Virus record (IMG/VR): IMGVR_UViG_3300017469_000047
Location: 1 to 6,304 of that record
DNA length: 6,304 nt
Strand: one strand, 5' to 3'
The notes below the pieces were generated by a model. That model was not told the origin of the DNA, searched no databases, and worked only from the letters and a program-made list of their open reading frames with translations. Below, in pieces: positions 1 to 1,359 of the stretch; positions within the stretch are counted from its first letter, which is position 1, and each line of letters starts with the position of its first letter. Made by a program: the position numbers and the translations under genes.

Positions 1-23
1 CTTGGTGTGTGACCTTTTGCCAT
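1..23 (-). CDS. Rudivirus major capsid protein (SIRV2 gp26/ORF134-like), N-terminus only, truncated by window edge
   Basis: Reverse complement of 23..1 reads ATG GCA AAA GGT CAC ACA CCA AG = MAKGHTP(R), matching the recalled SIRV MCP start MAKGHTSR. Rudiviral context and an upstream TATA box support it. Only about 8 codons are visible. Confidence 0.85.
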
Positions 24-53
24 TTTTGGTCAAATACAATTATTATCTTCAAA

Positions 54-61
54 TATATAAA
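54..61 (-). promoter_or_regulatory. TATA box of capsid gene
   Basis: Minus-strand TTTATATA 31-38 nt upstream of the ATG at 23; no downstream GTC motif. Confidence 0.65.
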
Positions 62-72
62 AACTCACGTCT

Positions 73-153
73 TATACACAATATAACGTATATGCTATGT
101 TGCCATTGTTCTTCCTGTAGGAAATCAAGCCATATACATAATATAATGTATAT
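73..153. repeat. Two imperfect palindromic 21-bp direct repeats, 60-bp period
   Basis: 73-93 tatacacaatataacgtatat versus 133-153 tatacataatataatgtatat (19/21 identical). The second copy is a perfect dyad ATATACAT-N6-ATGTATAT (132-153). Confidence 0.75.
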
Positions 154-159
154 AGCATG

Positions 160-195
160 CCCTAATTGTTAACTAAATACCGATAATAATTAGGG
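160..195. repeat. 12-bp inverted repeat / hairpin
   Basis: ccctaattgtta (160-171) pairs with taataattaggg (184-195): 11 Watson-Crick pairs plus one G-U on the + strand, 12-nt loop. Confidence 0.7.
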
Positions 196-242
196 AAATT
201 GATAACTACTAATTAGACTATACGTTAACTAGAAATAAAACA

Positions 243-253: not shown

Positions 254-271
254 TCCATGAATATGAAAACT

Positions 272-589
272 ATGGAAGATATAGTTATAATTGAATGTAG
301 AAAGTTCACCGACCAAGTATTGAATTGGTTAAACGCATTTTATCCAAGTAACATTTATTATTACCATGTAATGGATAACGATACTTCACTAACTTTAAAA
401 ATAAGATTAGTTATGGCACATAATTTATATATAAAAAGAGTAAATGGAATTATAAGTTACATCAAAAGAACTTTTAGATATTCGCCATATATAAGAGTAA
501 ATTACAGATATAACAGGCCTTTCTTTGATTTAACAATATTATGCGGCAAGGGCAATGAAGACTTTTATTCGTCAGAAGATGAAAGATAA
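272..589 (+). CDS. Hypothetical protein (~105 aa), positional equivalent of the small ORF between the dUTPase and MCP genes in SIRV
   Basis: Open frame 248..589. ATG 272 is preferred from TATA spacing (alternatives 257 and 263; TTG 248 lies inside the promoter). It ends 12 nt before the next gene, suggesting an operon. Confidence 0.75.
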   Translation: MEDIVIIECRKFTDQVLNWLNAFYPSNIYYYHVMDNDTSLTLKIRLVMAHNLYIKRVNGIISYIKRTFRYSPYIRVNYRYNRPFFDLTILCGKGNEDFYSSEDER

Positions 590-601
590 AATTGGGCAAA
601 T

Positions 602-1132
602 ATGATACTAAGCGATAGGGATTTAAAATATTATCTACAAAAAAATTGGATAAAAATAACACCATTTTCCACTGAAATAGTAAGAGAAAACGGCATAGAT
701 TTACGAATTGGCACACAATTTGCAAGATTAAATAAAACTGACAAAGTTTTTGAAATTGGTAAAAATCTTGCAGATTTCTATACTATTACACATGCTAACG
801 ATTTTATAGTTCTTCCACATGAACACGTTTTGATGACAACTATGGAATATATTGAATTACCAAATGATGTAATGGCTTTTGTTAATTTACGCTCAACTTT
901 CGCCAGATTGGGATTATTTATCCCTCCAACTATAGTAGACGCTGGATTTAAAGGGGAATTAACTATAGAAATTGTAGGTTCAGAATTTCCAATAATGCTA
1001 AAAAGTGGGCAAAGATTTCTGCATTTAATATTTGCAAAGACATTAACTCCAGTTGAAAACCCATATCACGGTAAATACCAAAATCAAGAAAATGTTACAT
1101 TACCAAAATTTGAAAACAAGAAAGAAAGTTAA
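602..1132 (+). CDS. dcd: dCTP deaminase / dUTPase family protein (trimeric dUTPase fold)
   Basis: Motifs [38 protein letters not shown] and PYHGKYQ are typical of Sulfolobales Dcd and the SIRV dUTPase. Confidence 0.95.
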
Positions 1133-1166
1133 AAAAGAATTTTTTTATTTGGTCTAAAAACTTTTT
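1131..1166. terminator. Probable bidirectional T-rich terminator between convergent dcd and svtR
   Basis: AAAAAAGAATTTTTTT and AAAAACTTTTT give oligo-T tracts on both strands. Confidence 0.55.
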
Positions 1167-1174
1167 CGGGAATT

Positions 1175-1336
1175 CTATTTCGCTTCTCTCTTCTGTAGGT
1201 ATTCAATCACTGCCTCCCGTATAACCTCTGTTAGTGTTGTATCATGCTCTGCACAATACCTTTTTAGCCTTATTTTTAAATTCCTATCTATATTAATACC
1301 GAAAACTACCTTTTCACTTTTGGGCTTTTCCGCCAT
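1175..1336 (-). CDS. svtR: SvtR-like ribbon-helix-helix transcriptional repressor (53 aa; not in ORF track)
   Basis: Hand translation MAEKPKSEKVVFGINIDRNLKIRLKRYCAEHDTTLTEVIREAVIEYLQKREAK matches the recalled SIRV1 ORF56b pattern VFGI..D..LK.RLK.YCA....LT..I.EA..EYLQKR. Confidence 0.92.
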   Translation of the reverse strand: MAEKPKSEKVVFGINIDRNLKIRLKRYCAEHDTTLTEVIREAVIEYLQKREAK

Positions 1337-1359
1337 TTTTGCTCATTCTATAAATACAT

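What the first reader, a model, noticed from the sequence alone, without database searches (positions are those of the whole stretch)
73..153. Paired palindromic 21-bp repeats at 60-bp period directly upstream of the capsid promoter
Seen: two 19/21-identical units separated by 39 unique nt; the second is a perfect 8-6-8 dyad, and the first lies about 12 nt upstream of the MCP TATA box. Inference: tandem operators for a late-gene regulator, or an origin or packaging signal. The repeat-spacer-repeat dimensions also resemble a minimal CRISPR-like unit or guide RNA, although the repeat lacks the Sulfolobales ATTGAAAG end.
Basis: partly seen in the sequence, partly recalled or inferred. Interest (0 to 1): 0.6.

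Follow-up and report, generated by a model that had tools for sequence, protein, structure and literature searches.

The report
Conserved palindromic upstream element of rudivirus promoters
The two 21-bp palindromes are real: they are two copies, one per 60-bp promoter module, of a protein-binding site that rod-shaped archaeal viruses keep about 50 bp upstream of the transcription start of the capsid gene and several other central-region genes, not a CRISPR unit, origin or packaging signal.

Summary
R1 (72-93) and R2 (132-153) are 19/21 identical and 60 bp apart, R2 is a perfect 8-6-8 dyad, and R1 ends 11 nt from the capsid (MCP) TATA box. No shuffle of 1000 reproduced the repeat.

The window is a fragment of a Yellowstone-type rudivirus. 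The same 20-bp palindrome, TATACATWATATWATGTATA, lies with its centre exactly 59.5 nt before the MCP start codon in all 15 distinct Ice- and Usarudivirus promoter sequences examined, and at 68.5 nt in Hoswirudiviruses. Further copies sit exactly 60 bp (and once 120 bp) upstream in 11 distinct lineages.

The palindrome also recurs at 4-6 other intergenic sites per genome, always about 6 nt upstream of a BRE/TATA. These include the promoters of ORF564, ORF399, ORF110 and ORF269 and the ORF488/ORF154 intergenic region.

SIRV2 RNA-seq contigs put the MCP mRNA 5' end 9 nt before the ATG, so the palindrome centres lie near -51 and -111.

This is best read as an upstream transcription-factor site, most likely activating. 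It coincides, by inference, with the upstream footprint of the host activator Sta1 on the SIRV1 capsid promoter. The binder is not established. The CRISPR-like, origin and packaging readings are not supported.

The parts
1..23 (-). 5' end of the major capsid protein gene. The ATG is at 23-21 (MAKGHTP...) and the gene runs off the contig end.
   Evidence: Direct reading. The N-terminus, the leader TTGACCAAAA-ATG and the synteny match the SIRV MCP genes.
24..49 (-). Short leader and initiator region of the MCP promoter. The transcription start is inferred near position 32, 9 nt before the ATG. It also holds a match to the loose published Sta1 consensus at 39-54.
   Evidence: In three SIRV2 RNA-seq runs the MCP contigs begin at L050 2005, which is SIRV2 14049, 9 nt before the ATG. 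This was transferred to the window by gap-free alignment.
50..71 (-). Core MCP promoter: the TATA box (complement of about 50-63, TTTTTATATATTTG) and a BRE-like stretch (GTGAGTT, within complement of 62-71).
   Evidence: Direct reading. The block CGTGAAAATTTAT is conserved in 15 Ice- and Usarudivirus promoters, and the same palindrome-N6-GAGT-TTTATTT layout occurs at other promoters.
72..93 (.). R1, the promoter-proximal copy of the palindrome. It is an imperfect dyad with its centre 59.5 nt before the MCP ATG, about -51 from the inferred transcription start.
   Evidence: The position is identical in all 15 Ice- and Usarudivirus promoter sequences examined.
94..131 (.). Spacer between the two copies. 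Its length is fixed and its sequence is poorly conserved. It appears to be a decayed copy of the BRE/TATA-to-start part of a duplicated promoter module.
   Evidence: Mean pairwise identity is 0.61 for the spacer against 0.83-0.87 for the palindromes, while the spacing is exactly 60 in 11 distinct lineages. In SIRV5 the stretch after the distal copy still resembles GAGT plus a TATA.
132..153 (.). R2, the distal copy. It is a perfect 8-6-8 dyad, one substitution short of a perfect 22-bp palindrome. Its centre lies 119.5 nt before the ATG, about -111 from the start.
   Evidence: It is the best-conserved block of the intergenic region (0.87).
62..170 (.). Two tandem units of about 60 bp (62-110 and 122-170 are detectably similar, 71%). 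Each is one palindrome plus flanks.
   Evidence: the repeat finder family D1. One to three such units occur at 60-bp steps in relatives.
209..218 (+). Half-site-like copy, TATACGTTAA, identical to the far arm of R1. It lies 6 nt before the A/T-rich box of the divergent gene's promoter. Its status is uncertain.
   Evidence: Inverted repeat I4, 84-97 with 214-227, and direct reading. TATAC-rich repeats occupy the same place in relatives.
257..589 (+). Divergently transcribed gene of unknown function, a homologue of SIRV2 ORF103c. It shares the intergenic region with the MCP gene.
   Evidence: phrog_8699, E 3e-40. BLASTP to SIRV2 ORF103c, 4e-21.
1175..1336 (-). SvtR/56B-like ribbon-helix-helix protein. 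It is the only recognisable DNA-binding protein encoded in the window and is listed as context and as a candidate binder to test.
   Evidence: Pfam PF21432 56B_RHH, E 2.9e-11. BLASTP to SIRV2 ORF56b, 5e-16.

Best explanation
R1 and R2 are two copies of a conserved promoter-upstream element of Rudiviridae. It is a 20-22 bp palindrome, TATACATWATATWATGTATA, that serves as the double-stranded DNA binding site of a symmetric (dimeric, or dimer-of-dimers) transcription regulator.

It lies about 6 nt upstream of the BRE/TATA, with its centre near -51 from the transcription start. In archaea this is the position of an upstream activating site rather than of a repressor operator.

The same element precedes the promoters of several central-region genes, including minor structural proteins, so it defines a regulon. 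At the MCP promoter, the most heavily expressed viral gene, the whole 60-bp promoter module (from the palindrome's upstream edge to the transcription start) has been tandemly duplicated in many Yellowstone-type rudiviruses. The upstream copy lost its TATA but kept, and even perfected, its palindrome. This gives two (in one contig three) phased binding sites that presumably raise occupancy or cooperativity.

Shown:
- the repeats are real;
- their position and spacing are conserved;
- the motif is dispersed at promoters;
- the MCP RNA 5' end has been located in SIRV2.

Inferred:
- protein binding;
- the activating sign;
- the binder. The best-documented candidate is the host winged-helix activator Sta1, whose upstream DNase I footprint on the SIRV1 capsid promoter falls on this palindrome by my mapping.
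For: 1. Position. The palindrome centre is 59.5 nt before the MCP ATG in all 15 distinct Ice- and Usarudivirus promoter sequences and 68.5 nt in four Hoswirudiviruses. Second copies lie exactly 60 bp upstream in 11 distinct two-copy lineages, with a third at 120 bp in L018. ARV3, from another genus, has a weak second copy, also at +60.

2. Phylogenetic footprint. Mean pairwise identity is 0.87 for the distal palindrome, 0.83 for the proximal, 0.78 for BRE/TATA, 0.61 for the spacer and 0.50 further upstream.

3. Regulon.
- SIRV2 has 4 sites with at most 2 mismatches against 0.04 expected. SIRV5 has 6 against 0.03. ARV1 and SMRV1 have none.
- Nearly all sites with up to 4 mismatches are intergenic by the records' annotation, in genomes that are 80-93% coding.
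- Nearly all are 42-66 nt from a start codon.
- The promoters involved are orthologous across genera: MCP, ORF564, ORF110, the ORF269/methyltransferase operon, ORF399, ORF1070 and ORF436, plus the ORF488/ORF154 intergenic region.

4. Shared layout. Nine oriented sites follow palindrome-N6-GAGT-TTTATTT-(GTC).

5. Symmetric double change in ARV3, TATACCTAATATTAGGTATA, as expected for a dimer site.

6. Viral enrichment. 33 of the 54 IMG/VR loci carrying the pattern are rudiviral.

7. RNA evidence. SIRV2 RNA-seq contigs from three runs start 9 nt before the ATG, 26 nt after the TATA, which places the palindrome centre at about -50. No contig covers the palindrome.

8. Sta1 literature (PMC1635249).
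- Sta1 was the only protein pulled down on the SIRV1 promoter 134, 399 and 56 fragments.
- It activated promoter 134 in vitro.
- It gave two roughly 20-bp footprints, one in the core promoter and one about 30 nt upstream.
- The Reg2 oligo maps to -40..-11.
- The only matches to the published consensus in the expected upstream place are -70..-55, inside the palindrome (-69..-50), and an adjacent overlapping one at -82..-67 on its outer edge.
- The 399 fragment also contains the palindrome.

9. The hairpins are predicted unfolded at 78 C, so the symmetry is more plausibly read by a protein on duplex DNA.
Against: No binding or transcription experiment exists for this window, and the figure showing the SIRV1 footprints is not held. 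The overlap of the palindrome with Sta1 region 1 is therefore my inference.

Sta1 is an imperfect fit.
- The motifs shown to be essential for Sta1 binding at the host sso0777 promoter (TTATT, CANGNA, TTATT; PMC2175319) are not in the palindrome.
- Sta1 also bound the promoter-56 fragment, which lacks the palindrome.
- Its measured affinity for the one oligonucleotide tested, the core-promoter oligo Reg2, was low (10 uM).
- R1 does not match even the loose consensus.

An upstream position does not prove activation. SvtR represses from about 80 nt upstream (PMC5569661).

The palindrome is absent from ARV1 and SMRV1 and weak in SRV, SBRV1 and ARV2, so it is not universal in the family.

The lineages compared are related, so the counts of lineages are not independent events.
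Confidence: 0.7

Rival explanations
1. The palindrome is a repressor operator for a virus-encoded ribbon-helix-helix protein (an SvtR-like or gp21-like protein, bound as a dimer of dimers as Arc binds its 21-bp operator). It keeps the capsid and other late promoters off early in infection. The two sites nucleate spreading toward the TATA box.
For: - Most characterised archaeal viral regulators are RHH repressors, and SvtR acts from a distal high-affinity site (PMC5569661).
- The window encodes an SvtR-like RHH at 1175-1336.
- gp21/ORF59b is the only recognisable DNA-binding regulator, among the small SIRV2 proteins compared, that is shared by all motif-bearing genomes. It is reported to bind viral middle-late promoters (PMC9976892).
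- No high-quality copy of the palindrome was found in any of the Sulfolobales representative genomes scanned. This favours a viral over a host regulon.
- In two-copy promoters the distal site is near perfect, while the TATA-side arm of the proximal site is degenerate (17 against 4 mismatches). This is a high-affinity-distal, low-affinity-proximal pattern.
Against: - Neither the SvtR consensus (best match has 4 mismatches) nor the gp21/aCcr1 box AGTATTA or its seed GTATTA occurs in the window's intergenic region.
- SvtR homologues were not detected in the Hoswirudiviruses that carry the palindrome, while gp21 is also present in ARV1 and SMRV1, which lack it.
- The gp21 beta-strand does not co-vary with the motif variants.
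- Only the host 14-kDa protein was seen in pulldowns from infected cells with the full promoter fragment, although 6-7 kDa proteins could have been missed.
Confidence: 0.2
2. R2 is only a relic of a tandem duplication of the promoter and has no function of its own. Only the proximal copy, if either, matters.
For: The repeated unit is about 60 bp, the same as the distance from the palindrome's upstream edge to the transcription start. The stretch after the distal copy looks like a decayed BRE/TATA. SIRV1, SIRV2, SIRV3, SIRV10 and the Hoswirudiviruses manage with one copy.
Against: The distal copy is the most conserved block (0.87), whereas the rest of the duplicated unit has decayed to 0.61. 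It is closer to the perfect palindrome than the proximal copy in most lineages (10 against 21 mismatches in total). The 60-bp spacing is invariant despite spacer divergence.
Confidence: 0.07
3. The repeat-spacer-repeat is a minimal CRISPR-like array or encodes a small guide or structured RNA. Alternatively, the palindromes act as a replication origin, a packaging signal or a cruciform.
For: The dimensions (21-22 nt repeats, 39-nt interval) fall within the range of Sulfolobales arrays. From my own knowledge, virus-borne mini-arrays exist in some Sulfolobales viruses. Palindromes are common at origins.
Against: - There is no ATTGAAAG-type repeat end.
- The similarity continues into the 'spacer'.
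- The interval has only chance matches in phage and virus records (E >= 0.6).
- There is no Rfam family.
- The element lies upstream of the mapped MCP start, and no SIRV2 RNA-seq contig covers it (weak evidence, because contigs drop rare and small RNAs).
- The hairpins are predicted to melt at 78 C.
- There are 6 or more dispersed copies per genome, each at a fixed distance from a BRE/TATA. This does not fit a single origin or packaging site.
- From established knowledge, rudiviral replication starts at the terminal repeats.
Confidence: 0.03

Closest known systems
Upstream Sta1-protected region of the SIRV1 ORF134 (capsid) promoter (Kessler et al. 2006, PMC1635249)
   Same: It is the orthologous promoter, and the palindrome sits at the same distance from the start codon (59.5 nt). 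The published footprint is described as about 20 bp, imperfectly palindromic and about 30 nt upstream of the core-promoter site, which is where the palindrome lies. R2 and the window's core promoter match the published loose consensus ATNT-N8-WNAT. Sta1 binds as a dimer and activates this promoter in vitro.
   Different: The window has two copies 60 bp apart, where SIRV1 has one. R1 does not match the consensus. The published 16-bp site is off-centre relative to the 20-22 bp palindrome. The nucleotides essential for Sta1 at its host target are absent. The family-wide distribution at other promoters is not mentioned in any of the papers I could search.
Operators of archaeal viral RHH regulators (SvtR of SIRV1; gp21/aCcr1 of SIRV2)
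   Same: They are short A/T-rich, partly symmetric sites in rudiviral promoters, bound by small dimeric proteins encoded nearby. Several sites occur per genome, and distal high-affinity sites have been described.
   Different: The published motifs (ATnnTTCAAnAnnnnnAAAATG and AGTATTA) are not present here. The phyletic patterns of SvtR and gp21 do not match that of the palindrome.
Early-gene regulatory sequence of rudiviruses controlled by Aca8/gp1 (Bhoobalan-Chitty et al. 2024, PMC11065993)
   Same: It is a conserved promoter-associated motif that marks a co-regulated gene set in the same viruses and was found by comparing upstream regions.
   Different: That motif marks terminal, immediate-early anti-defence genes and centres on a strong BRE/TATA. 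The palindrome marks central-region genes, including structural ones, and lies upstream of the BRE.
Archaeal upstream activating sites (for example the Ptr2 sites of Methanocaldococcus; from established knowledge)
   Same: Palindromic sites for a dimeric factor lie just upstream of BRE/TATA, often in pairs, and act by helping TBP/TFB recruitment.
   Different: The sequence and the organism are unrelated, and activation has not been shown for this element.

Membership tests
Sta1 binding site (host Lrs14-like winged-helix activator) | Located about 30 nt upstream of the core-promoter Sta1 site of the capsid promoter | tested here: met
   In SIRV1 the Reg2 oligo maps to -40..-11 and the palindrome to -69..-50. 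The window aligns to SIRV1 without gaps. The footprint figure itself is not held, so the overlap is inferred.
Sta1 binding site (host Lrs14-like winged-helix activator) | Match to the published consensus ATNT-N8-(A/T)NAT | tested here: inconclusive
   R2 matches on both strands (132-147 and 138-153), and the core promoter matches at 39-54. R1 does not match. The consensus is of low information in 73% A+T DNA.
Sta1 binding site (host Lrs14-like winged-helix activator) | The motifs TTATT, CANGNA and TTATT, shown essential at the host sso0777 promoter | tested here: not met
   Neither R1 nor R2 contains TTATT or CANGNA. The nearest TTATT is at 40-44, in the core promoter.
Sta1 binding site (host Lrs14-like winged-helix activator) | Physical binding of Sta1 to the element | not testable with these tools
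   This needs EMSA or footprinting with an R2 oligonucleotide.
CRISPR mini-array | Repeats resemble host CRISPR repeats, including the conserved 3' end | tested here: not met
   There is no ATTGAAA(G/C) in 24-256 on either strand. The repeat is a dyad of A/T-rich arms.
CRISPR mini-array | A unique spacer bounded by the repeats, with a target elsewhere | tested here: not met
   The similarity extends 11 nt before and 17 nt after the 21-mer. The interval 94-132 has only chance hits in 50,697 phage and virus records.
CRISPR mini-array | Transcribed and processed | tested here: inconclusive
   No RNA-seq contig lies over the homologous SIRV2 region in 4 runs. However, contigs miss rare and small RNAs, and no small-RNA library was available.
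SvtR or gp21 (RHH) operator | Presence of the published binding motif | tested here: not met
   The best SvtR-consensus match has 4 mismatches, and no AGTATTA or GTATTA occurs in 24-256.
Replication origin or packaging signal | One or a few sites per genome, not tied to promoters | tested here: not met
   There are 6 sites in SIRV5 and 6 or more in SIRV2. Nearly all lie 42-66 nt before a start codon and about 6 nt before a BRE/TATA.
Rudiviral palindromic promoter-upstream element (defined here) | The 20-mer TATACATWATATWATGTATA with at most 3 mismatches, its centre 59.5 nt (and 119.5 nt) before the MCP ATG, followed by BRE/TATA | tested here: met
   R1 has 3 mismatches against the fixed 20-mer (2 with W allowed), at 59.5 nt. 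R2 has 1 mismatch (0 with W allowed), at 119.5 nt. The BRE/TATA lies at 50-71.

The most novel reading that the evidence does not exclude
The palindrome is the operator of a family-wide rudiviral regulon of central-region (probably middle or late) genes, read by a factor that is none of the three characterised ones (Sta1, SvtR, gp21). At the capsid promoter it has been amplified into arrays of one to three sites phased at exactly 60 bp. These arrays work like a small enhancer, with a strong distal site compensating for a weakened proximal one.
Probability: 0.35. Interest if true: 0.65.

Novelty: new member of a known kind. Interest (0 to 1): 0.45.

Why it matters
How archaeal viruses time and boost late or structural gene expression is poorly understood. 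Only a handful of regulators are characterised, and most are repressors with few known targets.

The element gives a precise, conserved and testable handle:
- a 20-bp site at a fixed distance from the BRE/TATA, at the capsid promoter and 4-6 other sites per genome;
- presence in three rudivirus genera, with weaker forms in two more;
- natural one-, two- and three-copy variants.

It also reinterprets the upstream Sta1 footprint of 2006 as part of a wider, strongly constrained motif. This raises the question of whether Sta1 or another factor is the real reader. For genome annotation it marks promoters, and in several records it points to mis-set start codons.

Tried and rejected
1. Rfam scan of 1-600 at a permissive threshold: nothing.

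2. BLASTN of the 39-nt interval against phage and virus records: only chance hits.

3. Full-text search for the motif strings and for a rudiviral promoter palindrome. No paper in the held library describes it apart from the Sta1 work. Kessler 2004 and Guilliere 2009 are not held, so a prior mention there cannot be excluded.

4. Host regulon test.
- The exact palindrome was scanned in one genome per prokaryote species. There were 73 hits, mostly Clostridia and none from Sulfolobales.
- At 2 mismatches or fewer in 301 genomes of the class containing the one archaeal hit, 36 genomes matched, against roughly 25 for the reversed control, with only one perfect site.

5. Hunt for a viral binder by phyletic pattern.
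- ORF154 (called a putative acetyltransferase in some of the records; no Pfam family matched here) is present in all motif-bearing genomes and absent from the two that lack the motif. It is not a DNA-binding candidate, and only two genomes lack the motif.
- ORF110, whose own promoter carries the palindrome, was folded (pLDDT 78). It gave a helix plus four-stranded sheet with only weak cystatin/monellin-like matches and no DNA-binding fold, so it was rejected as a candidate.

6. gp21 and SvtR alignments: the DNA-reading strand does not co-vary with the motif variants.

7. Reading the palindrome as back-to-back TATA boxes was rejected. The SIRV2 RNA 5' end fits the canonical TATA 26 nt upstream of it, not the palindrome.

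8. Weak pattern matches elsewhere in the window (1352, 2646, 3469) lie in or at the edge of coding regions, have 3 mismatches each, and were not pursued.

Full report
**What the window is.** The 6304-nt window is a whole IMG/VR viral contig, estimated 19% complete. Its closest relatives are the Yellowstone Sulfolobus islandicus rod-shaped viruses (Usarudivirus; 72-83% identity over the first 0.6-1.1 kb).

The first 23 bases are the start of the major capsid protein (MCP) gene on the minus strand (MAKGHTP...). Downstream on the plus strand lie:
- a gene of unknown function (257-589, phrog_8699);
- a dUTPase (602-1132);
- an SvtR-like ribbon-helix-helix gene (1175-1336, minus strand);
- a Rep-like gene, an ORF131b-like gene and others.

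The finding lies in the 233-nt region (24-256) between the divergently oriented MCP gene and gene 257-589.

**Observation.**
- R1 (73-93) and R2 (133-153) are 19/21 identical, 60 bp apart start to start, with 39 nt between them.
- R2, read as 132-153, is a perfect 8-6-8 dyad. R1 is an imperfect dyad.
- R1 starts 11 nt from the MCP TATA box (complement of about 50-63).
- In 1000 dinucleotide-preserving shuffles of the intergenic region, none reached a 19/21 repeat, 16 had a perfect 8-6-8 dyad and none had both.
- One correction: the similarity extends to 49 nt (62-110 versus 122-170, 71%). The repeated thing is therefore a roughly 60-bp module.

**Conservation at the capsid promoter.** I collected every MCP upstream region in the fetched phage records and IMG/VR loci and anchored them on the start codon.
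- The palindrome TATACATWATATWATGTATA has its centre exactly 59.5 nt before the ATG in all 15 distinct Ice- and Usarudivirus sequences.
- In the Hoswirudiviruses SSRV1, MRV1, ARV3 and (degenerate) ARV2, which infect three different host genera, the centre is at 68.5 nt.
- A second copy lies exactly 60 bp further upstream in 11 distinct lineages, including the window. One contig (L018) has three copies at 60-bp steps and one (L020) has a spacing of 84. ARV3 has a weak second copy, also at +60.
- SIRV1, SIRV2, SIRV3 and SIRV10 have a single copy.
- ARV1 and SMRV1 have none. SRV and SBRV1 have none at the capsid promoter and only weak, degenerate copies elsewhere in the genome.
- Because there are no indels, the sequences stack without gaps. 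Mean pairwise identity is 0.87 for the distal palindrome, 0.83 for the proximal, 0.78 for BRE/TATA, 0.73 for the leader, 0.61 for the spacer and 0.50 further upstream. The palindromes are the most constrained part of the region.
- The 60-bp spacing is kept although the spacer sequence drifts.
- In two-copy promoters the distal copy is near perfect, while the TATA-side arm of the proximal copy has decayed in several different ways: 17 mismatches against 4 in its other arm, and 6 and 4 in the distal arms. The window follows this pattern.

**A dispersed motif tied to promoters.**
- Scanning whole genomes, SIRV2 has 4 sites with at most 2 mismatches (0.04 expected from local-composition shuffles) and SIRV5 has 6 (0.03 expected). 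SSRV1, MRV1 and ARV3 have 1-2 (0.00-0.01 expected), and ARV1 and SMRV1 have none.
- Nearly all sites with up to 4 mismatches are intergenic by the records' annotation, in genomes that are 80-93% coding, and nearly all lie 42-66 nt before a start codon.
- The promoters concerned are orthologous across genera:
  - MCP;
  - the minor structural protein ORF564 (SIRV2, SIRV5, SRV);
  - the ORF488/ORF154 or ORF488/pyramid-protein divergent region (SIRV5 and the four Hoswirudiviruses);
  - ORF1070 (SSRV1, SBRV1);
  - the ORF269/methyltransferase operon;
  - ORF110;
  - ORF399;
  - ORF335;
  - in Hoswirudiviruses, the ORF436 operon and the viral TFB-like gene.
- Oriented toward the gene, nine strong sites share one layout: palindrome, 6 nt, GAGT/GTGA (BRE-like), TTTATTT (TATA), often followed by GTC.
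- ARV3 carries a symmetric double change, TATACCTAATATTAGGTATA, which is what a dimer-binding site would do.
- Of the 54 IMG/VR loci that contain the pattern, 33 are rudiviral.

**Position relative to transcription.** The homologous SIRV2 stretch was laid against RNA-seq contigs of infected cells: three runs of one study and one run of another.
- The MCP contigs begin at L050 2005-2023, and three runs have contig ends exactly at 2005. That is SIRV2 14049, 9 nt before the ATG and 26 nt after the TATA centre.
- The palindrome centre is therefore at about -50. By gap-free alignment, R1 and R2 of the window are centred near -51 and -111.
- No contig lies on the palindrome or the 240 nt upstream of the MCP start. 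Contigs drop weak and small RNAs, so this is only weak evidence of silence.
- The 60-bp unit equals the distance from the palindrome's upstream edge to the transcription start. In SIRV5 the stretch after the distal copy still resembles GAGT plus a decayed TATA.
- The simplest history is a tandem duplication of the whole promoter module, after which only the palindrome of the upstream unit stayed under selection.

**Who reads it.** This is inferred, not shown. Three characterised regulators were compared.

1. Sta1 (PMC1635249).
   - The SIRV1 promoter 134, 399 and 56 fragments pulled down one specific protein, the host 14-kDa winged-helix protein Sta1, from both infected and uninfected extracts.
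   - Sta1 activated promoter 134 in vitro and bound as a dimer.
   - It gave two roughly 20-bp imperfectly palindromic footprints, one in the core promoter and one about 30 nt upstream.
   - The figure is not held. The published Reg2 oligo maps to -40..-11. The published consensus ATNT-N8-WNAT matches at -31..-16, at -70..-55 inside the palindrome (-69..-50) and, overlapping its outer edge, at -82..-67.
   - The 399 fragment contains the palindrome at SIRV1 5204, but the 56 fragment does not.
   - In the window, the loose consensus matches R2 and the core promoter (39-54) but not R1.
   - Against Sta1: the nucleotides essential at its host target (TTATT, CANGNA, TTATT; PMC2175319) are absent from the palindrome. 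In addition, its loose specificity hardly explains a 20-bp motif conserved to the base.

2. SvtR. Its consensus (PMC5569661) is not present, and SvtR homologues were not detected in the Hoswirudiviruses.

3. gp21/aCcr1. Its box AGTATTA (PMC9976892) is not present. gp21 also occurs in the genomes that lack the palindrome, and the capsid promoter was not among those tested in that paper.

A search for another viral candidate gave nothing usable. ORF110, a core gene with the palindrome in its own promoter, folds into a helix-plus-sheet domain with no DNA-binding look. The exact palindrome was not found in any of the Sulfolobales representative genomes scanned. A looser scan of 301 related archaeal genomes showed no clear excess over a reversed control.

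**Mechanism proposed.** A symmetric regulator binds the duplex palindrome immediately upstream of the BRE and helps, or less likely hinders, TBP/TFB recruitment at a set of central-region promoters, some of which drive structural genes. At the capsid promoter one to three phased sites raise occupancy, and where a strong distal site exists the proximal one can be weak.
- The upstream position abutting the BRE, the in vitro activation of the orthologous promoter by a protein that footprints there, and amplification at the most expressed gene all favour activation.
- Sixty base pairs is about 5.6-5.7 helical turns, so the two sites are not on the same face. Whether they cooperate is open.
- The hairpins are predicted unfolded at 78 C, so a cruciform or RNA-structure role is unlikely.

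**Rivals.**
- A repressor operator for a viral RHH protein remains possible, at roughly 0.2.
- A functionless duplication relic is contradicted by the conservation pattern.
- The CRISPR-like, guide-RNA, origin and packaging readings fail their defining tests.

**Novelty and verdict.** The element is the orthologue, here duplicated, of a region already footprinted in SIRV1, so it is a new member of a known kind. What I did not find described in the searchable literature is:
- the exact 20-22 bp palindrome as the conserved unit;
- its fixed geometry;
- its spread over orthologous promoters across rudivirus genera;
- the 60-bp arrays.

Two key older papers are not held, so a prior mention cannot be excluded. 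Interest is moderate (0.45). The result is a solid, testable cis-regulatory signal with an unidentified or uncertain reader, not a new kind of system.

Noticed in passing
window 209-218 (+), with inverted repeat 84-97 / 214-227: TATACGTTAA, identical to the far arm of R1, lies 6 nt before the A/T-rich box of the divergent gene's promoter. Relatives have TATAC-rich repeats (TATAGTATA/TATACTATA) at the same place. It may be a variant or half-site of the same element serving the divergent gene.
   Followed up: partly
window 160-171 / 184-195: A 12-nt inverted repeat, CCCTAATTGTTA / TAATAATTAGGG (92% complementary, 12-nt loop), lies just beyond R2. Only the 184-195 arm is conserved in SIRV10 and L042.
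   Followed up: no
L066 (SIRV5) 15652; L070 (SSRV1) 10918; L072 (ARV2) about 12737; L073 (MRV1) about 10347: The start codons of the ORF488-family structural gene, whether annotated in the record or called by my own ORF finder, lie only 26-29 nt from the palindrome. This leaves no room for BRE/TATA plus a leader. In SIRV5 an in-frame ATG five codons downstream fits the common geometry, so these starts are probably set too far upstream.
   Followed up: partly
window 1132-1340, compared with L066 7460-7776: In SIRV5 a gp21/ORF59b-like RHH gene sits between the SvtR-like gene and the dUTPase. In the window the SvtR-like gene (1175-1336) directly follows the dUTPase, and no gp21 homologue was found by BLASTP anywhere in the 6.3-kb contig. 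gp21 is reported to be a core gene, so it may lie elsewhere in this genome.
   Followed up: partly
whole genomes L065-L074: ORF154 (labelled a putative acetyltransferase in some of the records; no Pfam family matched it here) is present in all eight rudivirus genomes that carry the palindrome and absent from the two that lack it (ARV1, SMRV1). The numbers are too small to interpret.
   Followed up: no
L050 2449-2616 (-) = SIRV2 ORF55, next to the MCP gene: This gene encodes a C2H2 zinc-finger protein (Pfam zf-C2H2, E 4e-6). It is conserved in SIRV5 but was not detected in other genera. It is another small DNA-binding protein to test on the capsid promoter.
   Followed up: no
L075-L147 (genome-contig scan): The exact 20-bp palindrome occurs once each in dozens of Clostridia/Oscillospiraceae ('Fimenecus', Ruminococcus) genomes from gut metagenomes. 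This seems a lot for so specific a pattern, although I did not estimate the chance expectation. It may be an operator or mobile-element end in those bacteria, unrelated to rudiviruses.
   Followed up: no
G227, G091, G126: Three large genomes of the archaeal class scanned carry many copies (up to 11) of TATAAATTATATAAAGTATA or its complement, which looks like a dispersed repeat or mobile-element end.
   Followed up: no
L050 2653 and 2667 (SIRV2 about 14697 and 14711): Contigs from three RNA-seq runs of one study differ from the SIRV2 reference by one inserted A and one C>A change in the ORF55/ORF335 intergenic region. This region lies next to a weak palindrome copy (SIRV2 14712). It is probably a laboratory strain difference.
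   Followed up: no
L070 22782, L072 24697: In SSRV1 and ARV2 a variant palindrome (TATTCAWAATATTATAAATA) precedes the virus-encoded TFB-like gene. The viral basal factor may therefore belong to the same regulon.
   Followed up: no
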